From Octopus sinensis (Eukaryota): DNA of 64,000 bases. Positions 13,776 to 39,410 of this stretch are shown one piece after another. The stretch spans positions 1 to 64,000 of the forward strand of contig NW_021833708.1 of assembly GCF_006345805.1 (NCBI RefSeq), in the 5' to 3' direction. A program made the translations under genes and the position numbers. Within the stretch, counting starts at the first letter, position 1; every line of letters begins with the position of its first letter. The notes under the pieces were generated by a model, which saw only the letters and a program-made list of their open reading frames with translations, did no database searches and was not told the origin of the DNA.

Positions 13776-13859
13776 ATGGATGTAAATAAGATTATAAGCA
13801 ACATTCTGGATGGGGACTTTAAAGATGTCGAACGATTTATCAAAGAAAATCCTGAAACT
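13776..13859 (+). CDS. Coding exon 1, N-terminal ankyrin cap (MDVNKIISNILDGDFKDVERFIKENPET)
   Basis: Acceptor ttcctttttattcaaaag ends at 13773, ATG at 13776, donor gtaagt at 13860, phase 0. The acceptor implies an upstream exon (UTR or coding). Confidence 0.8.
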
Positions 13860-15472
13860 GTAAGTTTACTTTATATTGCTTCCTCAATGTTAAATGTTTG
13901 TTTATTATTTTATACACAATATTAAATGTTCCTAAATAACCAGATATATTTGTCCATAATATTTCATTTCTTTCTTTACCTCTTTCTTCTAATCCTCATC
14001 ATTGTCACTTTTTATAAACATTCAACCAGACAATGAGGCATGCCAGAATTGATGGAATGTGAGTGAGAGAGAAACCCATCCTCACACACTGCAATGGAGT
14101 ATTCTGGCAGGAAATATTCAGTCCAAGAGATGGGGGAAAGATGGACCCAATAGATAAATGATGACTTTGTCAAGAAATTCTCTTGCCATACACAGTTGAA
14201 GGTTTTACCGATGTCATGGGCTACGCTATATCTTTTGCAGAAGTTGTCAAACATAACCAAAACACTGGGGAGTCACGTAGGAATCAGACCCCTGCTTGAA
14301 CCGGCTTTATGGAACTGTACTGGGGCTCATTGAATAGAGAAAGATACCCAAAGGGACAAAGATGATGGTTGTTTATGACTTTTTACTTCATAATTGAAAT
14401 ATTGGAAGTTAGAATGACTGGCTGGTAGTCAGCAGACAGGACACTATCAGCAAGAATTATAAAACAGGGCTTCTCTAAGATAGTAGTACTTTCCTTCGGT
14501 AGGGATTGCGAAGAATTTTATAAGGACCAGGGAGCCAAGGAGGCTATGGTGGTACAAATATATGAAACTCAATGTGTAGTTGAGTTTGGATCAGAGAACC
14601 ATCATGGTTAGGGAGTGGTGGGTGGAATGATTCTGTAAAATCTATAGAGATACTCTTGGTAAGAGACCAGAAAATGAGGCTTTAATTTGGAAGGGAAGAC
14701 AGCTGACAAATGGTGAAATGCAGAAAAAACATCCTTTATTTTCTTGATGACCATCATACATGTATTTCAATGGTGGGTGAATGTCTGCCAGTTAGTGAGG
14801 GTAGGTGTTTTCCTCAAGGAGAAGTCGATAGTGTTGTTTGTACAGCTGTAATACAGTTGTGTATGAACCACTCACACCTTCTTACATATTGTATGGCTAC
14901 AAACTAATGTAAGCCCTGATACTGCTGCCGCATTTAGGCTCAAAATTCTGATCACTACTTTCATAATATTTCTTATTTTCTCCATTGTCTTTTCATTGTG
15001 TCTACCTTTCCATAGTTGCTCAATTAGTTGTGATTGGTGTCGTTCAAAGATGTCACAGATGTCTAATTACAAGTAATTACTTTGTAATAGATTCAGTGAC
15101 TAACATAAATAGATTTTCAATCTTTCCTTGAGCTTATGCATGAACTAAACAGTCTTTCTAAGCCTTTTCCAACTTGATTTACCTGTGCTCTACACCTTTC
15201 TTGTAGATTTGCTTTCATTCTTTTCCAAGTAGATCCCACATTGCTGTTTCACCAGACATATGACATCTGAAGATCCATGCTTCATTTCAAACATCCTGTT
15301 CTTCTCTCACCATTTCTTAAATCTCCTTCATCATTATAGCATTAAATAAAAGTGCTACTATGCCAGGCATCAGTGATAACAGTGTAGAATTTCATGAGCT
15401 TTACCAGGGAATACTAAACTAAAATCTCTCTCCTTTGATATATTTTATATATCTTCTCTTTCTTCTCTTCAG

Positions 15473-15624
15473 GTCAACCAAATAAACTCACACAGTAAAA
15501 CTTTCTTAATGGCAGCTTGTGAACAGGGCAGCACAAGTCTAATAGCCTTCTTGATAGAATCTGGAGCCAATATGGACATGAGTGACAAGGAAGGTCTGAC
15601 AGCATTACATTATGCTGTGATTAG
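15473..15624 (+). CDS. Coding exon 2, ankyrin repeats (VNQINSHSKTFLMAACEQGSTSLIAFLIESGANMDMSDKEGLTALHYAVI)
   Basis: Polypyrimidine tract plus AG, donor gtaagg, phase 0 to 2, G-x-TALHYA ankyrin motif. Confidence 0.9.
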
Positions 15625-16554
15625 GTAAGGCTTGAATTAACTAAAATCTTCAGATCTGTTTTTGTTTTGAAATTTTTTGCAATTCCAGACTATTTGAATA
15701 TCCACAGATACCATAATAGTGACAGTGTGACACGATAACAGCATGATAGTAGTAACCAAATAACATCTTTTACTCATTTTCTCCATGAATCCTCTTCATT
15801 GAATCACCAAAATCTTTTTCGTTATTTGTTGTCAAAACAGATTATTTTTGTTTTCGAGATATTCTTTGAGATCCAACAGTTCTTAAGATTGACCCAATGT
15901 GATTCAGTGTCTTCTCTTCATATTGATTATGGAGAGATCGATCAATTTTTCTCCAAAGAAAATGTTATTTGAGATCTAAAGCAACAAGAAAGATTCTCAA
16001 GCTTGTTTTTGCAGTAAATAATCTGTAAATTTCTTACAGAAATTATTTCTCACCTCCATCAGCAACTCAACACATTTTGAGATCTATTATATTTTGAATT
16101 GTGCTTTATAAGGTCATCTCTGGACAATAAAACATGTTTTGAAGTTCTTGTTAGTTTCTATAGCTTCTGCAGTCACAAATTGTTCCAGAATTTTGCACAA
16201 ACACGCACACATCATCATCGTCATCGAATGTTGCTTTTCCATGCTGGCATGGGTAGGAGGGTTTGATAGGAACAGACAAGTCAGAAGACCACACCAAACA
16301 CTACTGTCTGCTTAGGTTTGGTTTCTATGGCTGGACGACCTTCCTAACACCAACCACTTTGCAGAGTGTACTGAATGCCTTTTACATGCCATCAGAACCA
16401 GTGAGGTCACCAATTAATTGCAAGACAAAGACCTCTCGACTGGTTGAGGTGGTGGGATGGGGGAGCTAATATTGCTGGAGAGAAAGGTGTCTTGCATTAG
16501 AAGAGGGACATGTCTCTCTTCAGATGGAGAAGACAGAGGAGGGAAACACTAGGT

Positions 16555-17450
16555 TAAAAAATTCTGTTTGGTCCAAGCAAAGAAAAAGGAAAAAATAGTG
16601 CAATAGGTGTGAAACAACATGTAGTAAACGAATACTCTTACTCTTTTACTTGTTTCAGTCATTTGACTGTGGCCATGCTGGAGCACCGCCTTTAATCGAG
16701 CAACTCGACCCCGGGACTTATTCTTTGTAAGCCCAGTACATATTCTATCAGTCTCTTTTGCTGAACCGCTAAGTGACGGTGACATAAACACACCAGCATC
16801 GGTTGTCAAGCAATGCTAGGGGACAAACACAAACACACAAACACACACGCACACATATATATATATATACATATATACGACGAGCTTCTTTCAGTTTCTG
16901 TCTACGAAATCCACTCATAAGGCTTTGGTCGGCCCGAGGTTATAGTAGAAGACACTTGCCCAAGGTGCCACGCAGTGGGACTGAACCTGGAACCATGTGG
17001 CTGGTAAGCAAGCTACTTACCACACAGCCACTCCTGTGCCTATGAAAAAAAATATGGCGAACGGGAGGTGGGGAGACGACTCTGAAAATTCAAATCTCAC
17101 CACTTCCCCATTCGTCGGCGAATTTTTTGTTCTTCATTTTCGTTTTTTACACATTATTTTACACCCAGTACTCTACTTTTGTTCAATTTTTGTGACGGTG
17201 TGGGTGGGTGGGGTGCGGACTTGGATGATTCACACGATCCGGTAACCTCACTAGACAACTGGTCCCAAAAATGAAAACAAGAAGTGTAATAGGTGTAAAG
17301 CAACGTTGAGTTTTCGGATCCTGTGAGATTGATCGTGTGAATTTTCCGAGTCGTCTCCACCACCCCTCGTTCGCCAACGTATTCGTTTACTACATGTTAT
17401 TTTACACCTATTGCACAATGTTTTTTGCTCGAGTCAAACACTGGAGTTTA
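16555..17450. mobile_element. MITE with long TIRs; a SINE is inserted in the left TIR
   Basis: 17056-17091 is inverted relative to 17339-17375, and 16595-16634 is inverted relative to 17378-17420. Confidence 0.65.
16635..17040 (-). mobile_element. tRNA-derived SINE family C; other copies about 26190-26507(-), 51673-52032(+), 55305-55450(+), 55687-56047(+), 59040-59447(-), 62520-62700(-, decayed)
   Basis: Head gagtggctgtgtggtaag...gggttcagtcccactgcgtggcaccttgggcaagtgtcttct, central (TG/TA)n, tail cagtcaaatgactgaaacaagtaaaagag. Confidence 0.85.
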
Positions 17451-17456
17451 ACTTAT

Positions 17457-17490
<34 letters not shown>

Positions 17491-17871
17491 GTGGAAGCAC
17501 TCCGTCGGTTACGATGATGAGGGTTCCGGTTGATCCGAATCAACGGAAAAGACTGCTCGTGAAATTAACGTGTAAGTGGCTGAGCACTCCACAGACGCAT
17601 GTACCCTTAACGTAGTTCTCAGGGATATTCAGCATGACACAGATAGTGACAAGCCCGGCCCTTTGAAATACAGGTACAACAGAAACAGGGAGTAAGAGAA
17701 AGTTGTGGTGAAAGAGTAAAGCAGGGATCACCACCATCCCCTGCCGGAGCCTCGTGGATCTTTTAGGTGTTTTCGCTCAATAAACACTCACAACGCCCGG
17801 TCTGGGAATCAAAACCGCGATCCTATGACCGCGAGTCCACTGCCCTAACCACTGGGCCATTGCGCCTCCAC
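17491..17871 (-). mobile_element. tRNA-derived SINE with the same head as 520-803 but a different 3' half
   Basis: Reverse complement reads ggaggcgcaatggcccagtggttagggcag...cacctaaaagatccacgaggctccggc...ctctttcacca, then an unrelated tail ending accgacggagtgcttccac. Flanked by (TA)n. Confidence 0.75.
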
Positions 17872-18759
17872 TATATATATATATATATATGTATCTATAT
17901 ATATATATCTATCTATATATATATATATACACACATATATATATATATATACACACACATATATATATATACATACACACACACACACATATATATATAC
18001 ACACACACACACAAATATATAATAAATATTGGTTTGTTTATATATTCATTTATGTGTGTTATATGACCGCCATACTTCCTTGTTGGTCACTGTTTCTTTT
18101 GGCGGTAAAAATACGTCTCGTTGCCCTTAACAACAAACTTTCTCTTGCATAGTCTGTTGCTATGACAACATTACATTTGCAGACGTAGTTTTCCCGCCAA
18201 TTACGACGTGCTGTTGTTGTTGTTGTTTTTTTAGATTGATGAGAAATCTGCTATCAATTAGTTTGTCTATAATTTTCAGACATTCCATCTTTCGCAAAAG
18301 GATTACAATACATTTTTCAATGTATACCAAATATATAGATACTAACAACGGTACTTAATCCTTGTTTTGTATTGTACACTCGCTGGGATAAAAATATTTA
18401 TACTTTATACCCTCACCTATTAATATGTGTATACACACACACGTACACATTTGTTTACTGTGTATTAACGATTATACGTATTTCAGTGGCTCATATTACT
18501 CTGTCTGTCTTTCTCTCTATATACATACATATATATATATATACATACACATACATGCATATATATATATATAAATATATATATACATACACATATACAC
18601 CTATATAATATTATTGACTTTGACATTTCAACTAGCGATATATACATACATATATGTATGTATGTGGGTGTATATATGTATGTATATATATATATATATA
18701 CATACATATATGTATGTATGTGGGTGTATATATGTATGTATATATATATATATATATAG

Positions 18760-19450
18760 GCATACTTACACAACTGGGCCCCCACGACGAATTTGTTTCC
18801 TTATAACTTTTAGACAGATGGATATCTTTTGATGAAATTTCTATGACAAAAATGCTTCAAATGATGAAGATTCCAATTATATTGGAATTTGTTGTGAAAA
18901 CAAATTTTCAAACGTTGAGAAGTTGACTTAAATCCTTATAGAAACTTTCAGAAAAATGGATATTTTGTTTGTGTGAAAATTTCTACAAATCCCTTTCAAA
19001 GGATTAGATTAGGATTATATCGGAATTTAACATGAAAAAACGTTAAATATTTGGTGGATACACACACATATATACTGACAACATCACGGTTATTTTTCCA
19101 AAGTTCATCTTTCAGTTCTGATGTGTATCAGTGTATATCTCTGCGAATCCACCAATTTAACTTTTCTTCATATTAAATTCCGATATAAGTGGAATCTTCA
19201 CCATCTGAAACGGTTTTATTGAAAATTTCATTAGAAAATATTTATTTTTGGGAAAGAAAGCCGACTCGGGCAAACTTTCCCAATTTCTCTGCACCCACTA
19301 AAAATTTTTTCTCACAATAAATTCCAATATAATTGGAATCTTCGCCTTCTGAAGCATATTTTTGAAAGAAATTTCATTAAAAAATATCGTTTTTCTAGAA
19401 GTTACAGGGTAACAAATTCGTCGGGGGAGCACACTTGTGTAGTTATGTCT
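18760..19450. mobile_element. MITE with ~140-bp imperfect TIRs
   Basis: cccacgacgaatttg...gaagattccaattatattggaattt is mirrored by aaattccaatataattggaatcttc...caaattcgtcgggg. Confidence 0.7.
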
Positions 19451-19608
19451 ATACAGGCATGCACGCACACAGACATATATATATATATACACACGCGGCT
19501 GTAATATATATATATAGGTTTTTATGCATTTAATTGAACACGAGTGTATATTTAATGTAATTGTTAAGTGAATGTCTGTGATGTTTTATGTATTTTCCTT
19601 CCTTTTAG

Positions 19609-19765
19609 ATATAAAATTGATGCAGTGGCCTCCTTAGTTTCCAGGGGAGCAAATGTTAATAAGCAGGACTCAGACGGCGACACACCTCTACATCTGGCTG
19701 TGAGGAACAACTATGAAGATGTAGTCAAAGTCCTGTTAAGTAGCAAAGGAAATAACACTTTACAG
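19609..19765 (+). CDS. Coding exon 3, ankyrin repeats (YKIDAVASLVSRGANVNKQDSDGDTPLHLAVRNNYEDVVKVLLSSKGNNTLQ)
   Basis: ttccttttag acceptor, gttagc donor, phase 2 to 0, GDTPLHLA motif; lies within ORF 19568..19879. Confidence 0.92.
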
Positions 19766-20639
19766 GTTAGCGAATACATTTATATTTGTGTATATAGATA
19801 TGTATATATATGTATGTGTGTGTTATATGTATATGATGTATACATACAGTTTAGTGCCCCAAATTTCGTTTCTTCATAACTGATGATCCATATTATTTTA
19901 AATAAAACTTGCTGCAAGACTTCCTTTTCTACCCCACAAAGAAACCACCCTTTCTTTAAATTTTTTTCCCCGACACAAATCCCGCTTTTCGGTTAAGGGA
20001 AATACGAATCTGCAAAAAAATTGGCAAAAATCGGCATTTTTAAATTACCCCCACCCCCATTTCCTTCATTCTTTACTTTTTTCACAATTTTTTTTTTTTT
20101 CAGAATTTGCAGAAAAATACGGAAATGATGATTCGGACAAAAATTTCAAAACATTTCTGTAGTTGGGGTTAGGGTTAGTGTTGGGGAAAAAAAGTCAAAG
20201 TTGAAGAATTTTGGAGGGGGTGGAAATTCCACTGCCGATTTTTTGGCAATTTTCCGGAACCTCCGAGTCCGAAATCGGGGGGTTTTGGCAAAAAAATTCT
20301 TTGAATAAGCAAATTTAGGTGAAAATGGTGGTGGTGGTGGTGGGGGGACTCTTTTGAAAGTTGCTCATTTCCTTGTGTGAGAGTGTATATATATATATAT
20401 ATGTGAGAGTGTATATATATATATGTGTGTGTGTGTTTATATGTATATATGTGTGTGTCTGTGGGTACAGGTATGATATGAACCTCATTTATTTACTCCT
20501 CTCCATTTATTTACTCCTCTTCATTCCCCCTGTTTATTAATCTGATTCTTTCTCTTTTTCTGAAATTTTTCATTTTTGCGCTGCCCCCCCCCATCCACTT
20601 GACGCCATCTTTGATGTCTTTATTGTTTATCTTTTTTAG

Positions 20640-21406
20640 GTCACTCAGCGAAATAATAAAGGTTGGACACCTCTGCATCGTGCCTCGTATAATGGACACA
20701 CAGACACAGCTAAACTTCTCCTACAACAAAATGGCACTGATGTGAGGGTGGTAAACAAATATGGTTGTACACCTCTCCATCTTGCCTCGTATAATGGACA
20801 CACAGACACAGCTAAACTTCTCCTACAACAAAATGGCACTGATGTGAGGGTGGTGACCAACGCTGGTTGGACACCTCTACATCATGCCTCATATAATGGA
20901 CACACAGACACAGCTAAACTTCTCCTACAACAAAATGGCACTGATGTGAGGGTGGTGACCAACGATGGTCGGACACCTCTCCATCTTGCCTCTAATCAAG
21001 GACACACAGACACAGCTAAACTTCTCCTACAACAAGATGGCACTGATGTGAGGGTGGTGGACAACGCTGGTCGGACACCTCTACATCTTGCCTCATATAA
21101 TGGACACACAGACACAGCTAAACTTCTCCTACAACAAAATGGCACTGATGTGAGGGTGGTGACCAAAGCTGGTTGGACACCTCTACATCTTGCCTCTAAT
21201 CAAGGACACACAGACACAGCTAAACTTCTCCTACAACAAAATGGCACTGATGTGAGGGTGGTGACCAAATATGGTTGGACACCTCTCCATCTTGCCTCGT
21301 ATTATGGACACACAGACACAGCTAAACTCCTCCTACAACAAGATGGCATCGATGCCAATAAAGTGGACAAAGCTGGTGACACTCCTCTCCATCTGGCAGT
21401 TCGAAA
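20640..21406 (+). CDS. Coding exon 4: 7.5 near-identical 34-aa ankyrin repeats (102-bp units)
   Basis: Acceptor cttttttag ends at 20639, donor gtaagt at 21407, phase 0 to 2. Units start at 20640, 20742, 20844, 20946, 21048, 21150, 21252 and 21354. Consensus V-R-V-V-x-x-x-G-x-T-P-L-H-x-A-S-x-x-G-H-T-D-T-A-K-L-L-L-Q-Q-(N/D)-G-T-D. Confidence 0.95.
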
Positions 21407-22190
21407 GTAAGTCCCCAATGGATTTGGATTATCCAAATCTGTTTCTTTAATGTTTTCAATAACGTTTGTTTTCTTGTTTTGAGTCATTCATGTCATAATC
21501 CCACCATGGGACGTCGTGCTTCAACTCTCTCTCTCTCACACTCTAATGACACTGTAACCTACTTCATTAATTAATCATCATAATTATTTATGTTGTTGCT
21601 GTTGTACCTGACTAGATTCTTTACTTCATCTCATCCTTCGTTACCTCAACGTTACAAGTTCAAATCTTTCCTTTTTCTTCTTTTCATTCCATATAAAACA
21701 CCTCACCCCTCTCTCTTGTAATTTTTCCTCTTTCTCTGACCCTGGGCTAAATACAGAATCATTCCCTTACAGTGTTTAGTTTGATCTGTTTATGTTCCAA
21801 GTTCAAATCCTGCCAGAGTATTTATTAACAACCTGGAGTGAAAATCTGTACCAGTAATATCCAGGGTTCATTTAATAAATTGTCCTCCCTCTTTTCTCCT
21901 GTTTTGTGATGTCTGATTGCTGTTGGCAAAATACCTTGTGGTATTTATTTACCACACTTTATGTTCAAAGTTCAATCCTGCTGAGGTCACCTTGTCCTTC
22001 CATCTTTGCTAGGCTAATAAAATACAATACCAGTCATGTACTGGGGTCCTTATAATCCACATTAACGCTTCTCCCCATCCTAAATTTCATGGCTATATAA
22101 CAGTTGTTCATCATACCATATATAGATTGCCGTGTTTACTCAGGTGTGTATATATATCGTTGATCTATAATGTAGAGAGTATGTCGAATA

Positions 22191-22738: not shown

Positions 22739-22983
22739 TATATATATTTATATTAAAGGGTAAAATCATAAATGATTTTTACCAAGTGGTCAGCGCGGAA
22801 ATATAACCACATAGGTAAATTTTTATAAACAATTTATAATTATATACATAATTATAACAAGGGCTTGGCTTGCTCCTCACCACGCACTGAAAAATAGACA
22901 TCAAAAGACACTATTGCCACCATTAATTCTCCGAGAAAAACACAGTACATGTGTTATAATTATGTATATAATTGTATAATGTT

Positions 22984-23016
<33 letters not shown>

Positions 23017-23426
23017 ATATGTAGGATCCAAGGATTGAGACGAGTAGGAGGTGAGCTTTCAGAACAAAAAGGGTTTTATTGGGGTGCAAGGTTGTTGGTT
23101 TTTCCCTTACCGCATCTTTGTGTTTGAAATGTGCCTCCTATTGACAGTGTAAAACTTGATTTAATCAAGACACCCTTGGTCTGAAGAGTGGCCTGTGGTA
23201 TACACCTCGTTTGGATATTTACCAGTTCTGATGTTCCACCTGCTTTGAAACATACGTAGCCAGATTTTATCTTAACTCATATATATATATACACAAATGT
23301 ATAATGTGTATTGTGTGTATGTAATTATTGATGTAATTAGGTTATAATGACCTAATTACATTTGTTTTCATTGGTTAATCTAATAATAATAATTGTTTTT
23401 CCTCTCCTCTTTTGTATAACTTTCAG

Positions 23427-23462
23427 GCAACAATATGGTGTGGTATCGTGATGCTGGCCCAG
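23427..23462 (+). CDS. Coding micro-exon 5 (expected K-QQYGVVS-x-MLAQ), carries an apparent 1-nt deletion
   Basis: tataactttcag acceptor, gttagt donor. It is 36 nt where 37 nt is needed to join phase 2 to phase 0. As given it reads ...GTA TCG TGA (stop); adding one base restores ankyrin helix 2 (VVSxMLAQ-DSVKLDIEN). Confidence 0.7.
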
Positions 23463-23774
23463 GTTAGTTAACAAATACATATTATATCCTCTCTCTAGTA
23501 TTCAATATTTATATCATCAAAATACCAGTGAAATTCTGGGAGTAGATTTAATCAACTGCACTGCAGCAGCCTTTAAATAGCAGGTCTTGGGTCTGTGAAG
23601 AATAATTATGTTGGTAATAACAATGATGATAGTAGTCGTAGTGATAACAGTCCAACTGACCACCACTGCTGATAGTACTATCTTTAATGGTCAGACAAAA
23701 CAAGATCATTATGAATTCAACCCATATATATCAGATTATATATATCATCATCAAACACTCTGCCAAATGCCCAT

Positions 23775-23847: not shown

Positions 23848-23896
<49 letters not shown>

Positions 23897-25919: not shown

Positions 25920-26915
25920 TTATGTATGTATGTATGTATTGGGATTGTATCACCAATTATTATGACATGATACTGTTTACACTATAACCTTGTAGTAACA
26001 ATAAAACATATTACGGATCAGGGTAACAACAACAATCCATACACAAACCAACAAACAATGAAAACAACACCTTACGACTTCCTGCAATTAACACCTACTC
26101 TCTCTGGTCTCTCACTCAGACTGCTACTATTCATAGTCGTTCAGTCAAGTCTGTTCTTGCATGGGTTCTTGTGACTCTCGCCACAACATGTAATCGAGTC
26201 CAGGACTTATATTTTGTAAGCCTAGTACTTATTCTGTTGATCCTTTTTGCCAAATCGCTAGCTTACGGGGATGTAAACACACCAGCATCGATTGTTAAGC
26301 AATGTTGGGAGGACAAACACAGACATACAAACACACACACACACATATACGATGGGCTTCTTTCAGTTTTTGTCTACCAAATCCACTCATAAGGCTTTGG
26401 TCAGCCCGAGATGATAGTACAAGACACTTGCTCAAGGTGCTATGCAGTGGGACTGAACCCGGAATCATGTAGTTGGTAAGCAAGCTATTTACCATAGCCA
26501 CTCCTGTATAAAAAGCACCATCCATTCTTGGCCGTTGCCAGCCTCGCCTGGCCCCCGTGCCAGTGGCACGTAAAAAGCACCATCCGTTCATGGCCGTTGC
26601 AAGCGCAGCCCCGACTGGCCTCATGCCAGTGGCACGTAAAAAGCACCATCCGTTTGTCGCGTTGCCAGCCTTGCCTGGCCCTCGTGCCAGTGGCACGTAA
26701 AAAGCACCATCTGTTCGTGGGCGTTGCCAGCCTTGTCTGGCACGTAAAAAGTACCCACTACACTCATGGAGTGGTTTGGCGTTAGAGGGCATCCAGCCGT
26801 AGGAAACATTGCCAGATCAAACTGGGCCTGGTGCAGCCTCTGGCTTCCCAGACCCCAGGAACCGTCCAACCATGCTAGCATGGAAAGCGGACGCTAAACG
26901 ATGATGATGATGATG

Positions 26916-28576: not shown

Positions 28577-28624
<48 letters not shown>

Positions 28625-28926: not shown

Positions 28927-29139
28927 GATTCAGTGAAACTGGATATTGAGAATCATAAGAAAATGACACCATTGATGGAAGCCGTGTCCAGGGCCCACCT
29001 CGGAATTATCCATAAACTTATTATAAATGGTGCAAACATAAATGCTGTCGACAATGATGGCAATAATTGTTTGCACCTCTCAATAATAAAGAAAGAGATG
29101 TTCCATTCTGAGGTGGAACCCATTCCCATTTTAGATGAG
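28927..29139 (+). CDS. Coding exon 6, ankyrin repeats (DSVKLDIENHKKMTPLMEAVSRAHLGIIHKLIINGANINAVDNDGNNCLHLSII...LDE)
   Basis: ttttacttccacaaag acceptor, gtaagt donor, phase 0 to 0, within ORF 28870..29163. Confidence 0.9.
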
Positions 29140-30835: not shown

Positions 30836-31014
30836 TGCTGCAGAGAGCTCCAACTGGACATGGATAGGAGGCTCTCTGGAATAGTAGTTTTGAGTTACCT
30901 TGCCAGCCAAGGAGCCAACTTATACCATCGTAATAAGAAGAAGAAAGTGACCCCATTGGACTACATAAAAGATCAACATGTGAAAGAAAATTTAAAAACA
31001 TTTTTACAATCACT
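30836..31014 (+). CDS. Coding exon 7, last ankyrin/cap (CCRELQLDMDRRLSGIVVLSYLASQGANLYHRNKKKKVTPLDYIKDQHVKENLKTFLQS)
   Basis: tttgcag acceptor, gtaagt donor, phase 0 to 2. Resembles the Mind-bomb segment [24 protein letters not shown], recalled from memory. Confidence 0.88.
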
Positions 31015-33006
31015 GTAAGTACTCACTGGCAATGCCAAGATACACCAGGACATTTTCTCTTTTGTATATAATCATGTTTATATGTTTATTTAGTTTGAAT
31101 TCTCCCAATGTATTATTCCGTCATTAGTGTCTTGACTCAAGATAACAATAATGATTCTCTTTCTTGACCACACAGCGATGATCATAGCAAGCTAAGAATT
31201 CTCATTTCATTTCTTCCGACTCTTGTACTACATACATACATTTGCCGCTAACCCTTAAATGTTTGAATCTATTCACTAATTCTGCTTGTTCTTATGGTCC
31301 CCCACAAAATATAACCCTTTAATTTGTTTAACCCCTCGGTACCAAGTTAATTCGTTCGTTACTCTGTTAATTTCTTCAAACCCCGATTGCTTAAGTCTTA
31401 TCACTACCGTCCCCAATCAAAATCTTCGCCGCCCGCCATTCGCGGTTCGCCCGCCCTTTCCCACCCCCACCACCCATACTGGAGAACACTCTGTTTACAC
31501 CATCCTCACCGGATATCCCCTCTACCACCGCCACCACTACGTGTGTCTGTTCCTCCTACCCCTCCTCCTCAATATACTTTCTCACTATGTATTTACCCCT
31601 GCCTCTCTCCCCCTAGACAGAAGCAGCTAGCGCCGCAGCTCATCAAACGTCCCACTTAACCTGTTATCTTATGTTCCTCCTGTTTTGAAATGTGTCACTG
31701 CCTCAACCGGCTATCTCCTTCCAGCCCCCTCCCCCACTCGTGATATCCTACGTTTTACTTCCTACTTTTCATTCTGTCTAGAACCTGCCACCAACCCTAC
31801 CTGTCATCGTTTCTCTTTACCCCAAACCTTCCACTCTGGTGCTCCCCTATATTACATGCACACACCCCACTTTCTCTCCCTCTCTTCTCTCTGCCGGAAC
31901 CCTCCCCCTGTCGCAATGCAACGAAAAAAGGCAATAACCGATCGTGGCCGATGCCAGACCCCTCTGGCACCTGTGCAGGTGGCATGTAAAAAGCACCCAC
32001 TACACTTGCGGAGTGGTTGGCGTTAGGAAGGGCATCCAGCTGTAGAAACACTGCCAGATCAGACTAGAGCCTGGGGCAGCCCCTGGCTCCCCAGACCCCA
32101 GTCAAACCCGTGCTAGCGCAGAAAACGGACGTTAAACGATGATGATGATGATGATGATGAATTCTGACACAAAGCCAGCAAGGTCAGGGAGGGGATAAGT
32201 CAATTACAACAGCCCCAGTTTTCAACTGGTACTTATTTTATCAACAGCAAGGTAAAGTCAACGCAGCTGAATTTGAACTCAGCATGTAAAGGCAGACGAA
32301 ATGCCAGAAAGCATTTTGCTCCGTGTGCTAATGATTCTGCCAGCTTGCAGCCTTAAGACCACACAACAATAATAAGAACAATAAACAGAAAATACAGTTG
32401 TTAGTGGATCAAACGAAAAACACTATTTTGATGACATTCACATGATTGCTTGTGTTGACAGATATACCTCACCATCCACCCCTGACTATTTTAGAGTTCG
32501 GTGACCTCCATGAAAATGTAGTACTAAATAATAAAGTGAATGAACACATTTTGAAATTGCTATTTAGAAGTAAATAGGATTTATCTGTCTACCAACAATT
32601 TTTTCTCTCTCTCTCTTCTCTGACTCAATCAGTTGTCATGTACGCTTTCATGTGAAAATAACCTAAAACACACACTAACAATGCGTATGTCATCATCATC
32701 ATCATCATTTAACGTCTGTTGTCCATGCTGGCATGGATTGGTCTGTTTGACTGGGATGGCATGTTGGAAGGCTGCACCTTAGTCAGCCTTTGATATTTTC
32801 AGCCCACCCTTGTATGTGTATGTTAATGTGACACTTGTATACACACAAATCTGCTTGTATGTAATTGTTTACAGAAGAATTTATGATGTACTCTTGCTGG
32901 TTACTGTTGTGCCCCTTAATATTCTGTACTCTAAACATGTCCACAACGAAATATTTTATTATAAATGAATGTTAATGATGGGATGTGTTAATATTTTGTT
33001 CCACAG

Positions 33007-33149
33007 GTGTCGGTGGTGTCAAGAGAAAAAGGCTACTGTCACACTCCATCCATGTCAACATACTGTTATTTGTCAGAATTGCTGTTCTCAAATGACATTT
33101 AAGCAATGCCCCATATGTCGACAACACATACTCCGGAAAAGTGGATTTG
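33007..33149 (+). CDS. Coding exon 8, C3HC4 RING finger (CRWC...PCQHTVICQNC...CPICR)
   Basis: ttccacag acceptor, gtaaga donor, phase 2 to 1. Eight Zn ligands with IAP/MIB-type spacing. Confidence 0.92.
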
Positions 33150-33429
33150 GTAAGAACATTCTTTCTTGATCTGTCTGTTGTCTCATTAACTTTCTGGTAT
33201 GGAATAATGCATTTCATATTGTAGTGGAGACATGCAACTCCTTGTTTGTAACTATATATTATTAACACTTGTTATAATGTTTGCCATCCTTTTAGACATT
33301 TTATACTCACACTCGTTAGTTTTTAGATGTGATCAATGCTAAAAGAGACATTGTTTTCTGACTCTTTCACCTTTTGGCTTTACTTTTGAGTTGATTCGTT
33401 TTAATTCGAACATGAAGCCTGGTCATTGC

Positions 33430-33670
33430 TCCAAGGTGGTATCAGAAAGTTCACGGACTAGTTCTGTAGCATGCCAACAGATGGCAGCACACCGTTGCAT
33501 GCACAGTGAGAGCTAGCAATGACTTTCATGAGGCGGTGTGCTGGGTGACACCACTGCGTTTACTTCAAAAGTTGTGAAATTTGTGCTTTTGTGGTCATTT
33601 GTAGGCTGTAGTCTGCAATTTTCTAATGGGCAGGAACAAATAACCAATGTGAAATTTTGCGTTAAACTTG
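33430..33670 (+). mobile_element. Mariner 5' remnant
   Basis: EQITNVKFCVKL resembles the mariner transposase N-terminus, preceded by a decayed TIR-like aaggtggtatcagaaagttc. Confidence 0.5.
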
Positions 33671-33997
33671 TCCAGCAAAGACATAAGAAAGAAGCAACAA
33701 AACTAAGAGAAAAAGAGTGTTATGAAGTGATAACTAATGAGAGAATTTCAGAGTTGTTAGATTAGTATATAGGATGTCTTAAGAGAAAGATGAGATTTTG
33801 AAAGGTTTCCCCATTTTGTTCTTGTTGTAAATATTGAACTATTATATAGTAACAGCTTAGAAAGTGTTGACCGAAAGCATAGTGGTCACCAATTGACTAT
33901 TGATGATATGAATGCCTTACAATAATGGAATATAGATTATTAAAAGAGACAAACAAATTTTACTATGAAGTATAAAACTTTGAAATGCTTATTTCAG

Positions 33998-34048
33998 TGT
34001 GTCCAAAGTTTGAAGAGAAAGCAGTCCAGGCGGTTGTAGAGTCTGTTG
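33998..34048 (+). CDS. 51-nt symmetric phase-1 mini-exon, copy 1 (VCPKFEEKAVQAVVESV)
   Basis: ttatttcag acceptor, gtaagt donor, open in the phase left by the RING exon. Confidence 0.75.
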
Positions 34049-34161
34049 GTAAGTATAAAATAACTGTAATTGATTTCTATAAATTTTACCTTCACCTGAG
34101 ATGTTTATTGTGTGAATGACTGAGAACAGGTTCCATTCTTAATTTCCAATTCTTATTTCAG

Positions 34162-34370
34162 AGTGTCCAAGGTGTAGAGAAAAAAAAAGTCAGACGTTGC
34201 AGAATCTTTTGGTGAGTATAAAATAACTGTAATTGATTCTATAAATTTACCTTCACCTGAATGTATTATTTGTGTGAATGACTGAGAACAGGTTCCATTC
34301 TTAATTTCCAATCTTATTTAGTGTGTCCAAGTCTGAAGAGAAAGCGGTCCAGACGGTGCAGAATCTTTTG
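34162..34370 (+). pseudogene. Mini-exon copies 2 (34162-34211, 50 nt) and 3 (34322-34370, 49 nt): frame-broken or mis-assembled
   Basis: Same AG/GT flanks as copies 1 and 4 but 1 and 2 nt short. Including both gives a TGA in copy 3. Confidence 0.5.
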
Positions 34371-34479
34371 GTGAGTATAAAATAACTGTAAGATTTCTAT
34401 AATTTTACTTCACCTGAAATATTATTTGTGTGAATGACTGAGAACAGGTTCCATTCTTAATTTCCAATTCTTATTTCAG

Positions 34480-34530
34480 TGTGTCCAAAGTCTGAAGAGA
34501 AAGCGGTCCAGACGGTTGCAGAATCTTTTG
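34480..34530 (+). CDS. 51-nt phase-1 mini-exon, copy 4 (VCPKSEEKAVQTVAESF)
   Basis: ttatttcag acceptor, gtgagt donor, intact frame. Confidence 0.7.
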
Positions 34531-35585
34531 GTGAGTATAAAATAACTGTAACTGATTTCTATAAATTTTACCTTCACCTGAAATATATTATTTGTGTGAA
34601 TGACTGAGAACAGGTTCCATTCTTACATTTCTTTCAAATGGATAGTGATAAAAGTAATTCTATTCACTACCTACAAATGCAAGAATATACAATAAAGGGA
34701 TTTTTATCGAAATATGGAATCATGAGACATAGGAAAAAGGTCCCACACGATAAGGAAAATATAGAAAAAAAGATAAAATATAAATCCTGCAGCGATTCTC
34801 TCCCCATAATGAGACACATTCACTTTTCTCTCATCTTATTGTTATCTATATCACCACCTTGATTATATATTCTTGAATATCATTTCTTATATACCATTTC
34901 AGATATTTTTCCTTTGCAACAATTGGTGTATGAACATTTGTGTTTCATTTAAGATGTTTTGTGCAAGTATACAGTTTTAGGATACTTGTTATCACTTTCT
35001 GTTTTACCTGTGTAGAACTAATCATTGCTCATCAGGAAAGGAAACTATTTCATTAAGGAGTCTTAAATATTTCCTGTATCAGATGAAATTCTGGTGAACT
35101 GTGAGTTGCATAGTTTAAAATTAAAGATTAAAAGCAGCAACGTTTGACAAAGATAACAGGTGTGACATGAGTTTGTGTCAAGGTCGTTGATGACCAGCTT
35201 GGTTGACATCAGAATTAAGCAAAAGAAGAGGGGAATGTTGATTAGTGAAGTCCAGTGGTGAGGGGACAATGCCATGTCATTGGTTTAGCATGGATACAAG
35301 AGATACATGTGATCATTAAATAAGATGATTGCAACGTTGTTAGATTAAGTAGGATGTCTTAATAGAAAAAGGAGGCTTAGGAAGGTCAGTCTATTTTATT
35401 ATGGGCCTAAATATTGAGCCATTATATAGGACCACGGTAGAAAGTATAAAACTATCAACCAAACCTTTAGTGGTCAGCAGTTGTCCATTGATGATAGGAA
35501 TGTCTTACAATAATAAAATATAAACCATTAACAGAGATCGGGAAATTGTGCTATGAAGTGTAAAATTTGGAAATATTTATTTCAG

Positions 35586-35657
35586 ATTCTGTAATGGTAG
35601 AGGAGAAGCATCTTCATTGGGTGTCCAGAAGCTTGGCAGGTAAATGGCAGGAACTTG
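35586..35657 (+). CDS. Death domain exon A (DSVMVEEKHLHWVSRSLAGKWQELG)
   Basis: atttatttcag acceptor, gtgagt donor, phase 1 to 1. Contains the W-x-x-L-G-R-x-L-G death-domain signature that continues into the next exon. Confidence 0.88.
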
Positions 35658-37169
35658 GTGAGTATAAAATACCCAATTAATTTCTATAAATTTTGCTTTC
35701 AGCTAAGCTTTTGTTTGTTTGAATGACTGAGAACCGGTTCCATTCCTAATTTCCAATTGAAAGTTTAGCTATAAAGTAAAGCTATCACTGAAATTTCATA
35801 AAATATCTACGGACGTCAGCACGGTTGTAAAATGAATAAATTAGAAGGTCCAGTAGAGTTAATACTATCGTTTGTAAAAGGGGACTCAAAAATATTGTCA
35901 TTTAAGAGTAAACAGGTGAATTAATGACAATGTTTTTGCTTGTTTACACTTTTAGTAATTTTACTGGTAGGTTGAGGCAGATATCTCCCTTAATCTGGCA
36001 GAATTAAGGGGAAAGGGTTCCAGATGTGCCATCATGTTTTCTCTTGGGTGAAGAGGACCATAATATCAAATGCAACCTTTTTAAAATGAGAGTGTGCATT
36101 GTGTGGGACATGTTGTCATCTCTCCCCTGGCCAGTCTGTTTTTCTATATTTATTGTAATTCTTTAGTCCCAGGTCAACATATATTTCCTGTCTCTATAGA
36201 AGACAGGCCCCATTGTCGATTGTGTTCATGGCTGGATTGAACTCAGCATTGTAAGTTAATGAAACACTCATTTATATTAGAAAAAAAGAATCTCAACAGA
36301 AAATTCAAACTCAACTCAATTTTGTTCTCAATTGAAATCATTTCACTCTCCTTTACATTACAAATGTCACATGGAAAGGCATGAACATCACAATATCCCA
36401 TTTCCCCTTGTCTGACAGTTTAACAACATAAAATATCATTTATACTATTATTTACAGCAATGCCCCTATTATTTACAGCAATGTCTTCTACCTCCCTATG
36501 GTACCTATATACATCTAGATAGACTGCAGCATAGAGAAATGTCTTTACAAGTACTTTTGAGCTATACTGGGGACTAGACTTGACTCAAGAGATCATGATA
36601 ATATCCCCTGAGTCAGCTGATATAAATCATCATCATCATCATTTGACATCCATTTTCCATGCTGGTATGAGTTGGATGGTTTGACTGAAGTCTGGAGAGC
36701 CAATGGCTGCACCAGGCTCCAATCTGATCTGGCAGTGTTTCTACAGCTGGATGCCCTTCTTAGTGCCAAACGCTCCGAGTGAGTAGTGGGTGCTTTTTAT
36801 GTGCCGCCAGCATGGAAGTCAGTCAGGTGGTCCTGGCATCAGTCATGTTTGGATGGTCCTTTTTACGTGCCACCAGCACATGGAGTCAGTCAGATCACAC
36901 TGGCATTCACCACATTCAGATGATGGCTTTCATGTGCCACCAGAACGGGGGCTAGTCAGGGGGCACTGGCCACAGCTGCAATTTTGGTTTTACTTGACTC
37001 AACAGGTCTTCTCAAGCATATCATATCACCCAATGCATCGAGGGTGCTCTTAAATGGGCCGGACATGCAACACTGGCATTGGCCATGGCTACGATCTCAT
37101 TTTAGTTGCCGGGTTTTCTCAATCACAGCATATTTCTCAAATCTTGGTCTCCTGTCATTGCCCCTGTGA

Positions 37170-38230
37170 GGCCCAATGTTCGAAGGCCATGCTTCATCAT
37201 CTCATCCCATGTCTTCCTGGATATACCTCTTCCACAGGTTCCTTCTACAGTTAGGAAGTGGCACTTCTTCACACAGTCGTCCTCATCCATACGTAACACA
37301 TGACCATACCAGCGTAGTCATCTCTCTTGCACACCATGTTTAATGCTTCTCATGTCCAACATGTCCTCAGCAGTCATGGCCCATGTTTCACTGCCATGTA
37401 GCATGGAAGTTCGCACTCAGAAACGATTTATCTAAATTAAGAAAGGACATCATCTACAACATTGCCAGCTTGCTATATGTCTGGGAGTCATACAAGATGT
37501 ACCAGTCATATACTGGGCAAAAATCAATCCACTAACACCAGGTCCATTATCATCATCCCCTTACATCCATTTTTCTAAGTTTGTAATGGTCAGACGACTT
37601 TTCCCAGAGTCGTTGTGGTCCTTTGTCAGGTTTGATCGCTTGTTTCCTTCAACTTGATTTCCAGGCATTTCTTTATCCAAATTTCATCCTCCATGTCCCT
37701 TCTATATCTATACTATTATCTTTTTTCTTGTACACTATCACAGATTTTTCAACACATTAACATTACACATTTAGTGATGTGTGCTCATCTCACTTCCTGC
37801 CAGTTTCCATGCATCCTCCACATTCCATGTAACATTGCAATTTCTCCTTCATTTGGAGACAGAATCCCTTAGTTGCCAGTAGACCTAACAGCTCCCTGTA
37901 CATTTTTCATCTCATTTTCCTTCTAACTACTGTGCTTTCAGAATAGTCTCCTCCACTTCTAATTCTGTCTCTTAGGTCACAGAAACTATCAACTATGCCT
38001 TTATTACTTGTACCTACTACAAACTTATCCTGTATATCTGCTACTTACAAAGTCCTTCCCTAACCTTAACCTGCCCTCCCTGTAAACTTGCTTGTTTGTG
38101 GATGCAGTGATTCTTTCAGGACCCAAGTGTTGTAGGTGTATGGCGTAGATGTTGGTGATTCTTGTCTTATTGCCTACAAACTAAAACTCTTCTCATTGCT
38201 AAGGCCTCTCCTGTATTAAATACTTTGAAA
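37170..38230 (-). mobile_element. Decayed RTE RT fragments
   Basis: Minus strand reads RWYGHVLRMDEDDCVKKC...GRGISRKTW. Confidence 0.6.
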
Positions 38231-39192
38231 TTGTGGCCTTGATCCAGTGAAAGAAGTTCTTGTTATAAGTCATGAATCCAAAAACCTTAAGCCAGTGCCC
38301 TCTATAGTATGTGATATTTACCTAACAGTATTTTATTTTTACTTTCTGTGGTTGAAATCATTTAGGTTCATAATCCCCATTTTTGAAATATTTTTAAATG
38401 TTGATAATTTTGAAATTTCTATTAATCATAGGTGGAAAGACATCACAAATGACTATTTCAGGCATTGATCACAGGATGTTATCAAACGACTGCGATTGTA
38501 TTCCTCCAAAGAGTCTCTGGAGTAACGTTACTCAACAAGGTGTGCAGGCTGGAGATTTGGGGTCTCTCCAGGTCAAGTGACTGCTTCTCTGCATTGAGAA
38601 TTCACAGCTCCAGTACTCCTGGCATGTGATTAAAATGTCACAGGAAAGAACCACAAGAGGGATTCTTCAAGCTGAGCCAACCGACAGGAGACCTAGGGGT
38701 AGAGCAAGAATGAGATGGTTGGATGATATCCATAGTTTCAATTGGTCATGTTTGGAAATCCTTTCAGAACTTCTAATGAAGGTTGCTTCTGATAGAATTG
38801 CATGAAGGAGGTGCCTGAAGACTCTACCCCTAAAACTCTCCTATGAATAGAGCCCAGAGAAGATGGACAGATGGATAAAATTATCTAACTATTGGTGGTC
38901 TTTGTTGATTCTTTAGGCTCTCATACACTTCTTCTGCCAGTTGTTCACCAGGCATTTTCTCTTGTGTAATTTTCAATTAATTTTTTTTAAATATTCTTCT
39001 TCTTCTCCAGCCTTTTTTTCAAATTCTTTGCTATTTTTATCAACATCTTTAGAAATAGATAACAATGTCTTCTAATTTCCCTGTTTCTTAAGTATCTCTC
39101 ACTCTTCTATTCACATAATTTCTTTGTCGTAATTAATACAGGTTTTATATTATCATTAATGCTGTTGTAATTATTTCTTATTTCTTTTGCAG

Positions 39193-39410
39193 GAAGGGAA
39201 TTAGGAATTAAACAAGATGACCTGGAAATCATCAGGCATGACTATTCCTCCAGCGTTGTGGAACAAGGTTTCCAGATGCTGCTCAAATGGTGTCGAAGCA
39301 ATGACCCAGAGAAACGTACACTTCGAATATTAAAAGCAGCTCTTGAAAGAACTGACTGTTTCGGTGCAATTGAATGTTTATCATCAGAATTCAATCGAAT
39401 TTCTTTGTAA
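39193..39410 (+). CDS. Terminal exon, death domain (GRELGIKQDDLEIIRHDYSSSVVEQGFQMLLKWCRSNDPEKRTLRILKAALERTDCFGAIECLSSEFNRISL*)
   Basis: tttcttttgcag acceptor, TAA at 39408-39410. Death-domain pattern (EQ..QML..W, T...L..AL). An AATAAA lies at 39657-39662. Confidence 0.92.

What the first reader, a model, noticed from the sequence alone, without database searches (positions are those of the whole stretch)
13776..39410. ANK(variable)-RING-death domain architecture: candidate sensor/E3-ligase/adaptor in one chain
Seen: about 14 ankyrin repeats including the variable cassette, one C3HC4 RING and a C-terminal death domain. Established: Mind-bomb proteins have ANK plus three RINGs after MIB/ZZ/REP modules and no death domain, while death domains mediate homotypic signalling in apoptosis and innate immunity (FADD, MyD88, IMD, RIPK1). 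Inference: a Mind-bomb-derived ANK-RING scaffold acquired a death domain and a diversifying binding module, so it could ubiquitinate bound ligands or nucleate death-domain signalling. Automated pipelines would probably label it only as 'MIB2-like' or 'ankyrin repeat protein'.
Basis: partly seen in the sequence, partly recalled or inferred. Interest (0 to 1): 0.75.

Follow-up and report, generated by a model that had tools for sequence, protein, structure and literature searches.

The report
Octopus ankyrin-RING-death-domain gene, interrupted here
The window holds one member of a large gene family, seen so far only in Octopus, that joins a variable ankyrin-repeat binding array to a ubiquitin-ligase RING and a death domain, but in this assembly a one-base gap splits the long protein so only a short RING-death-domain product is annotated.

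Summary
On the + strand, 13776-39410 holds ankyrin, RING (zf-C3HC4_3) and death-domain exons with AG/GT borders, and all three domains pass Pfam's cut-offs. The window is the Octopus sinensis locus of RefSeq XP_029656407-9 ("MIB2-like").

The single long chain is not encoded as assembled. A mini-exon (23427-23462) is 36 nt, against 37 nt in the O. vulgaris orthologue and in paralogues. Reading from exon 1 stops at codon 395. RefSeq starts at an ATG inside that mini-exon, giving about 3 ANK + RING + linker + death domain (295-312 aa). I cannot tell whether the missing base is a mutation or an assembly error.

At family level the architecture holds. Intact 583-607 aa ANK-RING-Death paralogues exist, there are about 40 clusters in three Octopus species, and none was seen outside the genus.

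- The junction from the last ankyrin repeats to the RING is Mind-bomb-like.
- The RING is closest to cIAP RINGs.
- The death domain is closest to those of RIPK1 and ankyrin-G.
- The 34-residue ankyrin units vary only at binding-surface positions (pN 0.34, pS 0.03).

Function is inferred: a substrate-recruiting E3 ligase docked to death-domain complexes, possibly immune.

The parts
13776..13859 (+). Exon 1: start codon and N-terminal helix (MDVNKIISNILDGDFKDVERFIKENPET)
   Evidence: ATG followed by a GT donor. Homologous to residues 1-29 of the intact paralogue P0033. Conserved in the O. vulgaris orthologue L001.
15473..15624 (+). Exon 2: ankyrin repeats 1-2
   Evidence: AG/GT borders. 94% identical to P0033 residues 28-77. 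Pfam Ank.
19609..19765 (+). Exon 3: ankyrin repeats 2-3
   Evidence: AG/GT borders. In frame with exons 1-2. Differences from the orthologue cluster at binding-surface codons.
20640..21406 (+). Exon 4: the 'variable cassette'. Seven near-identical 34-residue (102-nt) ankyrin units plus the start of one more
   Evidence: The six internal units are 87-96% identical at nucleotide level. Amino-acid changes among them sit at unit positions 5, 6, 7, 9, 14, 17, 18, 31 and 33. At the five a-priori binding positions pN is 0.338 and pS 0.031; elsewhere pN 0.033 and pS 0.102. The orthologue has 9 such units.
23427..23462 (+). Mini-exon, 36 nt, one base short. It links the cassette to the rest and holds the RefSeq start ATG at 23451
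   Evidence: AG/GT borders. The O. vulgaris copy is 37 nt (..ATCGTTGATG.. against ..ATCGTGATG..) and reads K-QHYGVVSLMLAQ in frame. Paralogues encode the same peptide. Here the read from exon 4 gives KQQYGVVS then TGA.
28927..29139 (+). Exon: ankyrin repeats 12-13, the second one atypical with an insertion
   Evidence: AG/GT borders. Part of XP_029656407.1. Pfam Ank 1.4e-7.
30836..31014 (+). Exon: Mind-bomb-like C-terminal capping ankyrin repeat (RLSGIVVLSYLASQGANLYHRNKKKKVTPLDYI...)
   Evidence: Profile A2 hits the MIB1 ankyrin domain 330-384 at 5.8e-13. The best Foldseek match is also the MIB1 ANK domain.
33007..33149 (+). RING exon: C3HC4, all eight zinc ligands present, Arg directly after the last Cys
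   Evidence: Pfam zf-C3HC4_3 1.1e-10. Closest solved RINGs are cIAP2 at 4e-8 and cIAP1 at 4.5e-8. Ligands read directly from the sequence.
33998..34048 (+). Cassette exon copy 1, 51 nt, 17 residues (VCPKFEEKAVQAVVESV)
   Evidence: Used in isoforms X1 and X3. First unit of a tandem array of about 159 bp period, 33984-34631.
34162..34211 (+). Cassette copy 2, 50 nt, out of frame
   Evidence: Its length is not a multiple of 3. Not used in any annotated isoform.
34322..34370 (+). Cassette copy 3, 49 nt, out of frame
   Evidence: It differs from the intact copy by single-base deletions in short runs.
34480..34530 (+). Cassette exon copy 4, 51 nt (VCPKSEEKAVQTVAESF)
   Evidence: Used in isoforms X1 and X2. 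The O. vulgaris orthologue has six copies at a 166-bp period, with 97% matches and no indels; four were read directly as 51-nt exons.
35586..35657 (+). Death-domain exon 1 (helix 1)
   Evidence: AG/GT borders. 100% identical to the orthologue. Part of the Pfam Death match.
39193..39410 (+). Death-domain exon 2 and stop codon
   Evidence: Pfam Death 5.4e-10. RIPK1 death domain 6.9e-7. The model has pLDDT 83-91 in this part. Only 88.8% identical to the orthologue, while the surrounding aligned block is 97.8%.

Best explanation
This is one locus of an Octopus-lineage gene family derived from the ANK-RING half of Mind bomb. Family members have lost the N-terminal Mind-bomb modules, keep a single RING, and have gained a C-terminal death domain after a disordered linker built from repeated 17-residue cassette exons.

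Likely mechanism (inferred):
- The ankyrin array is the ligand- or substrate-binding module. Its tandem 34-residue units are held constant in the scaffold and diversified at the binding surface.
- The RING recruits an E2 and ubiquitinates whatever the array holds, or neighbouring proteins.
- The death domain docks the protein by homotypic contacts into death-domain assemblies of the RIPK1/IMD/FADD type.
- The family therefore looks like a set of variable-specificity E3 ligases attached to cell-death or innate-immune signalling complexes.

At this locus, as assembled, one missing base in the 37-nt linking mini-exon separates the variable array from the RING and death domain. The only annotated products are 295-312 aa proteins with about 3 ANK, a RING, a linker and a death domain. 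This copy is either decaying under birth-and-death turnover or carries an assembly error.
For: Shown:
- Domains and splice structure, with exact identity to XP_029656407.1.
- Intact full-length paralogues have the same exon order and Ank + zf-C3HC4_3 + Death (P0033 607 aa, P0037 583 aa).
- About 40 clusters at 50% identity cover the RING or death-domain region. All 20 that I named are from O. sinensis, O. vulgaris or O. bimaculoides.
- Four family genes lie within 1.4 Mb of O. vulgaris chromosome OX597842.1.
- The ankyrin cap is MIB1-like.
- The RING has intact zinc ligands and a linchpin Arg and is closest to cIAP RINGs.
- The death-domain fold is predicted with confidence and resembles those of ankyrin-G, TNFR1 and RIPK1.
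- The linker is predicted to be disordered (pLDDT about 30).
- Among 16 distinct units from four loci, 23 of 34 positions are invariant. Variation sits at canonical ankyrin positions 1, 2, 3, 5, 10, 12, 13, 14, 27 and 29. At the five a-priori binding positions pN is 0.34 and pS 0.03 in both species.
- The frameshift at this locus is documented.
Against: - There are no expression, interaction or activity data. E3 activity, death-domain partners and an immune role are all inferred.
- In this window the variable array and the RING-death-domain part are not in one reading frame.
- The O. vulgaris orthologue has its own one-base frameshifts in exons 2 and 4.
- dN/dS between the two orthologues is 0.6-1.75. 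This copy may therefore be non-functional in both species.
- Absence outside Octopus is not proven. Giant generic ankyrin proteins filled much of the top-150 list, and other cephalopod proteomes may be missing from the libraries.
Confidence: 0.6

Rival explanations
1. This particular copy is a pseudogene, or is becoming one. The long ANK-RING-death-domain protein is no longer made here, and the annotated short isoforms are leftover open reading frames.
For: - A one-base deletion in the mini-exon gives a stop at codon 395.
- Two of the four cassette copies are out of frame.
- The O. vulgaris orthologue carries independent frameshifts in exons 2 and 4.
- Orthologue dN/dS is 0.68 for the N part, 1.75 for the ANK end plus RING, and 0.60 for the death domain.
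- The paralogue P0032 also contains an out-of-frame stretch in its model.
Against: - Exons 1-4 (386 codons) and the exons from 28927 to the stop (274 codons) are each fully open.
- All splice sites are kept in both species.
- Over 19.3 kb aligned to O. vulgaris, the window lacks single bases at 64 sites (41 in short runs) against 30 the other way. The damaged sites are of that same kind (TT to T), so assembly error is a real alternative.
- High dN/dS is also expected under diversifying selection or gene conversion.
Confidence: 0.35
2. The locus produces two separate products: an ankyrin-only protein from exons 1-4 and a short RING-death-domain protein from an internal start. The variable array and the ligase would then act in trans or independently.
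For: - RefSeq models only the short product, starting at 23451.
- The upstream ORF is intact for 394 codons and ends in the mini-exon.
- No annotated protein contains this locus's exons 1-4; the best match is a 73% identical paralogue.
Against: - Closely related paralogues join the same exons into one protein (P0033, P0037).
- A stop in the mini-exon, far upstream of the last exon junction, would normally mark such a transcript for nonsense-mediated decay (general knowledge).
- No promoter or transcript evidence was available.
Confidence: 0.12
3. It is simply the octopus orthologue of Mind bomb 2, working in Notch-ligand endocytosis as its database name suggests.
For: The database name is 'E3 ubiquitin-protein ligase MIB2-like'. 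The ankyrin cap followed by a RING is MIB-like.
Against: - No MIB/HERC2, ZZ or REP modules are present in full-length family members.
- None is present in + strand open segments of 40 residues or more upstream in the window.
- There is one RING instead of two or three, and a death domain is present.
- The family has dozens of fast-evolving copies found only in Octopus.
Confidence: 0.02

Closest known systems
Mind bomb E3 ligases (MIB1/MIB2)
   Same: Both have an ankyrin array ending in the same unusual capping repeat, followed directly by a zf-C3HC4_3 RING. MIB1's ankyrin domain is the best solved match by profile and by fold.
   Different: The octopus proteins have no MIB/HERC2-ZZ-MIB/HERC2 or REP substrate-binding modules, one RING instead of two or three, and a C-terminal death domain. 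They are multi-copy and fast evolving, and their ankyrin units are hypervariable.
cIAP1/cIAP2 (BIRC2/3), Drosophila DIAP2 and mollusc BIR-death-fold-RING IAPs (PMC8917759)
   Same: These have the closest RING sequences (4e-8). They also carry a death-fold domain and a RING in one chain. From general knowledge, they ubiquitinate the death-domain proteins RIPK1 and IMD.
   Different: The octopus proteins have no BIR domains. Their death-fold module is a true death domain placed after the RING, not a CARD placed before it. Target recognition would be by ankyrin repeats.
Death domains of RIPK1, ankyrin-G/ankyrin-1, PIDD and TNFR1
   Same: Closest death-domain sequences are RIPK1 at 6.9e-7 and ankyrin-3 at 2.6e-5. 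Closest folds are ankyrin-G (TM 0.79) and TNFR1 (TM 0.75).
   Different: No kinase, ZU5-UPA or receptor parts are attached.
Other ANK plus death-domain proteins: DAPK1, NF-kB p100/p105, ANKDD1 (from general knowledge)
   Same: Ankyrin repeats and a death domain occur in one chain. DAPK1 is also a reported MIB1 partner.
   Different: None of them carries a RING. Their ankyrin repeats are not tandem near-identical hypervariable units.
TRIM5alpha-type restriction factors and designed ankyrin repeat proteins (functional analogies only)
   Same: The logic is the same: a RING, an assembly domain and a rapidly evolving binding surface. The variable positions (canonical 2, 3, 5, 13, 14) are those randomised in designed ankyrin binders (positions from general knowledge).
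   Different: There is no homology to TRIM B-box, coiled-coil or SPRY domains. No binding or restriction activity has been shown.

Membership tests
Mind bomb (MIB1/MIB2) | N-terminal MIB/HERC2-ZZ-MIB/HERC2 module and REP repeats | tested here: not met
   Pfam finds none in the full-length paralogues P0033, P0037, P0057, P0243, P0272. It finds none in the window's N part. It finds none in upstream + strand open segments.
Mind bomb (MIB1/MIB2) | Ankyrin domain with the MIB-type C-terminal cap directly before the first RING | tested here: met
   Profile A2 against the PDB: best hit is MIB1 8v0e_A 330-384 at 5.8e-13. The single sequence aligns over 118 residues at 1.5e-11. The best Foldseek hit is also this domain.
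Mind bomb (MIB1/MIB2) | Two or three C-terminal zf-C3HC4_3 RINGs, with the last at the C-terminus | tested here: not met
   There is one RING, followed by a linker and a death domain. Only the paralogue P0272 has two RINGs.
Death domain (Pfam PF00531, death-fold superfamily) | Sequence match above the curated cut-off | tested here: met
   39.7 bits against a cut-off of 22.6, E 5.4e-10. RIPK1 death domain 6.9e-7.
Death domain (Pfam PF00531, death-fold superfamily) | Compact helical-bundle fold | tested here: met
   In the AlphaFold model, residues 210-298 are helical with pLDDT 83-91. TM 0.79 and rmsd 1.4 A to the ankyrin-G death domain. This is a prediction, not a solved structure.
Death domain (Pfam PF00531, death-fold superfamily) | Homotypic binding to other death domains | not testable with these tools
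   Needs pull-downs or co-expression.
RING-HC E3 ligases (zf-C3HC4_3, IAP/MIB type) | Eight zinc ligands in C3HC4 order | tested here: met
   The sequence reads C-x2-C ... C-x-H ... C-x2-C ... C-x2-C in LCRWCQEKKATVTLHPCQHTVICQNCCSQMTFKQCPICRQHI. Pfam 41.6 bits against a cut-off of 27.
RING-HC E3 ligases (zf-C3HC4_3, IAP/MIB type) | E2-dependent ubiquitin transfer | not testable with these tools
   An Arg directly after the last Cys (CPICR) is present, as in active IAP-type RINGs (general knowledge). Activity needs an assay.
Inhibitor of apoptosis proteins (IAP) | At least one BIR domain | tested here: not met
   No BIR match in the window's pieces or in the paralogues.
Ankyrin-repeat proteins | Tandem ankyrin repeats above the Pfam cut-off | tested here: met
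   Ank 307.7 bits and Ank_2 563.1 bits in the N part. The cassette unit is 34 residues rather than 33.

The most novel reading that the evidence does not exclude
The family is an octopus-specific intracellular immune receptor repertoire. Natural hypervariable ankyrin cassettes of the designed-binder type would recognise pathogen or danger ligands, and would be wired directly to a ubiquitin ligase and a death-domain assembly module. Diversity would come from three sources: gene duplication and conversion, changes in repeat number (7 against 9 units between sister species), and a choice among tandem linker cassette exons. That would be a cephalopod counterpart of TRIM5-like or NLR-like sensing, built from different parts.
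Probability: 0.2. Interest if true: 0.8.

Novelty: new variant of a known kind. Interest (0 to 1): 0.55.

Why it matters
Cephalopods have no adaptive immunity, and little is known about how they recognise intracellular threats. This family would be a concrete, testable candidate for lineage-specific innate sensing or cell-death control, for four reasons:
- it couples a surface-diversified ankyrin binder to an E3 ligase and a death domain;
- it has dozens of copies;
- those copies are clustered on a chromosome;
- it has been seen only in Octopus.

It would also be a natural example of the design principle behind engineered ankyrin binders. The proteins sit in databases under misleading names (MIB2-like, ankyrin-3-like, secG-like, PSMD10-like), and I found no paper describing the architecture. 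For this window the practical point is narrower: the annotated product lacks the variable array, so this copy is not the one to use for functional work unless the frameshift proves to be an assembly error.

Tried and rejected
- My first gene model had no mini-exon and gave a phase clash between the cassette exon and the next exon. Paralogue proteins showed the missing peptide and a motif search found the exon. My notes and the query briefly gave it as 23415-23450. The correct position is 23427-23462.
- The look-up of encoding contigs had no record for P0001 or P0033. P0029 gave the O. vulgaris orthologous locus instead.
- The first collinear-chain script kept only one spurious block and was redone.
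- The first dN/dS run used local alignments that lost the frame. Only the redone values are used.
- Two regular expressions for collecting ankyrin units were wrong (second half, 58) and were fixed.
- Because the query profile included an ankyrin repeat, giant generic ankyrin proteins took much of the exhaustive search's top 150. It therefore cannot prove absence outside Octopus.
I used joined open segments instead.
- Five literature searches found no description of ANK-RING-death-domain proteins in cephalopods.
- Considered and rejected: a true MIB orthologue (no MZM or REP modules) and an IAP (no BIR).
- Considered and rejected: a gene-model artefact joining two genes. Phases fit, RefSeq splices the RING to the death domain, and more than ten paralogues share the order.
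- A weak alternative donor (GCA|GTTCGA, three codons upstream of the exon-4 end) would restore the frame into the 36-nt mini-exon. I noted it but do not rely on it, because nothing supports its use.


Full report
**What is in the window**

The window is eukaryotic, AT-rich and full of simple repeats and LINE fragments. On the + strand between 13776 and 39410 I found open segments carrying ankyrin, RING and death-domain motifs and read their borders. The exons are:
- 13776-13859, with the start ATG
- 15473-15624
- 19609-19765
- 20640-21406
- 23427-23462
- 28927-29139
- 30836-31014
- 33007-33149
- 33998-34048
- 34480-34530
- 35586-35657
- 39193-39410, ending in the stop codon

All have AG/GT borders.

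Pfam on the spliced pieces gives Ank at 1.9e-95 with 9-10 matched repeats in the N part. The C part has one more Ank, zf-C3HC4_3 at 1.1e-10 (41.6 bits, cut-off 27) and Death at 5.4e-10 (39.7 bits, cut-off 22.6).

**Identity of the locus**

A protein search with the C part returned Octopus sinensis XP_029656409.1, 'E3 ubiquitin-protein ligase MIB2-like isoform X2', and its sister isoforms X1 and X3 on a 73,208-bp scaffold. Splicing the window at the coordinates above, starting at 23451, reproduces isoform X1 residue for residue. The three isoforms differ only in which of two 51-nt cassette exons they include.

**The chain is interrupted here**

The three RefSeq isoforms all begin with MLAQ.
- Paralogues encode ...TPLHLAV(R/Q)K-QHYGVVSLMLAQ-DSVKLD... 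across this junction.
- In the window the mini-exon is GCAACAATATGGTGTGGTATCGTGATGCTGGCCCAG, 36 nt.
- The orthologous O. vulgaris locus (L001, OX597842.1:29,577,981-29,619,969) has 37 nt, with ..ATCGTTGATG...
- Exon 4 ends in phase 2. Exons 1-4 plus the mini-exon therefore read ...LHLAVRKQQYGVVS and then TGA at codon 395.
- Skipping the mini-exon also breaks the frame.
- No annotated protein contains this locus's exons 1-4. The best match is a 73% identical paralogue.

As assembled, the long ANK(variable)-RING-death-domain chain is not encoded. The annotated product has only the last ankyrin repeats, the RING, the linker and the death domain.

**Mutation or assembly error?**

I cannot decide this with the tools available.

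Evidence for decay:
- Two of the window's four linker-cassette copies are 50 and 49 nt long.
- The O. vulgaris orthologue has its own one-base frameshifts in exon 2 and exon 4.
- dN/dS between the two orthologues is 0.68 for exons 1-3. It is 1.75 for the ANK end plus RING, based on only 2 synonymous and 14 non-synonymous changes. It is 0.60 for the death domain.

Evidence for assembly error:
- Both halves of the gene are otherwise fully open.
- All splice sites are kept in both species.
- Over 19.3 kb aligned to O. vulgaris, the window lacks single bases at 64 sites, 41 of them in short runs. The reverse case occurs at 30 sites, 16 in short runs.
- The damaged sites are of exactly that type (TT to T, AAA to AA).

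**The architecture is real at family level**

- The intact paralogues P0033 (607 aa) and P0037 (583 aa) align to every exon of the window in order. They carry Ank + zf-C3HC4_3 + Death by Pfam.
- A profile of the last ankyrins through the death domain (A1) found strong hits only in O. sinensis, O. vulgaris and O. bimaculoides in the word-indexed search. Scores then dropped to those of generic ankyrin proteins.
- The exhaustive search of 1.84 billion representatives listed about 40 short proteins whose best match extends past the ankyrin part. All 20 that I looked up are from those three species.
- Giant generic ankyrin proteins took up much of the top 150, so absence from other cephalopods is not proven.
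- In O. vulgaris, four family genes lie at 28.36, 29.25, 29.58 and 29.72 Mb of one chromosome. The family is therefore clustered.

**Origin of the parts**

- Ankyrin cap. A profile of the region after the canonical repeats (A2) has the C-terminal cap of the MIB1 ankyrin domain as its best solved relative (8v0e_A 330-384, 5.8e-13). The single sequence aligns to MIB1 over 118 residues, and Foldseek ranks the same structure first. One O. bimaculoides member has ANK plus two RINGs and no death domain (P0272). This supports descent from the ANK-RING half of Mind bomb.
- Missing Mind-bomb modules. None of the defining N-terminal modules is present in full-length members or upstream in the window. 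These are not MIB orthologues.
- RING. All eight zinc ligands are present, with an Arg after the last Cys. By sequence it is closest to the cIAP2 and cIAP1 RINGs (4e-8), then CGRRF1, MYLIP and XIAP. The MIB1 RING3 scores only 0.36.
- Death domain. It is closest to RIPK1 (6.9e-7), ankyrin-3, PIDD and TNFR1. The AlphaFold model (mean pLDDT 73) gives a confident helical bundle for residues 210-298. It superposes on the ankyrin-G death domain at TM 0.79 and 1.4 A. The cassette linker (residues 166-206) is predicted to be disordered.

**The variable cassette**

- Exon 4 holds seven near-identical units of 102 nt (34 residues, one more than the canonical repeat) and the start of an eighth, divergent unit. 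The six internal units are 87-96% identical at nucleotide level.
- Amino-acid changes among those six units are confined to unit positions 5, 6, 7, 9, 14, 17, 18, 31 and 33.
- I pooled 16 distinct units from the window, its orthologue and two paralogues. In these, 23 of 34 positions are invariant. The variable ones are canonical ankyrin positions 1, 2, 3, 5, 10, 12, 13, 14, 27 and 29.
- I also tested only the five positions known beforehand to face ligands and to be randomised in designed ankyrin binders (canonical 2, 3, 5, 13, 14; from general knowledge). At these, pN is 0.338 and pS 0.031 in the window, and 0.325 and 0.023 in O. vulgaris.
- The remaining 29 codons give pN 0.033 and pS 0.102 in the window.
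- Unit number differs between relatives: 7 in the window, 9 in the orthologue, about 4 and 6 in the two paralogues, read from their sequences.

This pattern fits diversifying selection on a binding surface carried by a homogenised scaffold.

**Most likely mechanism (inferred)**

The ankyrin array recruits a ligand or substrate. The RING ubiquitinates it, or ubiquitinates neighbouring proteins. The death domain places the protein in homotypic death-domain assemblies. Known parallels are cIAP acting on RIPK1 and DIAP2 acting on IMD (general knowledge). The combination of a RING, an assembly domain and a fast-evolving binder also recalls TRIM5-type restriction factors. The family's copy number, clustering, lineage restriction and surface diversification fit an immune or cell-death role. 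I had no expression or interaction data, and five literature searches found no study of these proteins. A paper on oyster IAPs describes BIR-death-fold-RING proteins, the nearest published mollusc architecture (PMC8917759).

**Verdict**

- Right: a Mind-bomb-derived ANK-RING scaffold, an added death domain, a diversifying array, and misleading automated names.
- Not supported here: a single chain at this locus in this assembly.
- Untested: ligase activity, death-domain signalling and any immune role.

I rate it a new variant of a known kind, with moderate interest. The family deserves study, but this copy is the wrong starting point unless the frameshift turns out to be an assembly error.

Noticed in passing
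window 33984-34631; L001 26194-27189: Between the RING and the death domain lies a tandem array of units about 159-166 bp long. Each unit carries a 51-nt, 17-residue cassette exon with its own splice sites. The window has four copies, two of them out of frame. O. vulgaris has six, with 97% matches and no indels; four were read directly as 51-nt exons. Choice among copies gives RefSeq isoforms X1-X3. Some paralogues carry up to five or six copies, some with a CPxC motif. The linker is predicted to be disordered.
   Followed up: partly
window 20640-21406 against L001 14641-15640: The number of ankyrin units differs between the sister-species orthologues (7 against 9 near-identical units). The unit is 34 residues, not the canonical 33.
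   Followed up: partly
window 39193-39410 against L001 31772-31989: The last death-domain exon is only 88.8% identical between the orthologues, while the surrounding aligned block is 97.8%. The differing residues resemble other paralogues in patches, which suggests gene conversion or positive selection.
   Followed up: partly
window 13700-41000 against L001: The window has twice as many single-base gaps as the O. vulgaris sequence (64 against 30 over 19.3 kb), mostly in short runs. This may reflect deletion-type errors in this assembly and would affect any frameshift call in the window.
   Followed up: partly
L001 about 9990 (exon 2) and about 15440 (exon 4): The O. vulgaris orthologue has its own one-base frameshifts. 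Its annotated products are a set of exon-skipping isoforms, for example P0029, which reads the mini-exon in another frame.
   Followed up: partly
paralogue protein P0032 (O. sinensis, 669 aa): This RefSeq model contains an out-of-frame translation of an ankyrin unit (LNFSYNKMASMPIKRTMMVTLLSIWQF). Frameshifts inside the near-identical repeats recur across the family or its assemblies.
   Followed up: no
window 4780-7547 (+) and 42277-44298 (+): Two LINE-type retroelements flank the gene. One has an endonuclease (Exo_endo_phos 4.4e-11) and reverse-transcriptase fragments (RVT_1 6e-15). The other has a 673-residue open reverse-transcriptase frame (RVT_1 4e-25).
   Followed up: partly
window 12900-13620: A long imperfect (TG/CA)n-type simple repeat lies directly upstream of exon 1. 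Similar simple repeats and repeated GC-rich elements fill the introns, for example at 8000-9200, 26300-26900 and 36600-37300.
   Followed up: no
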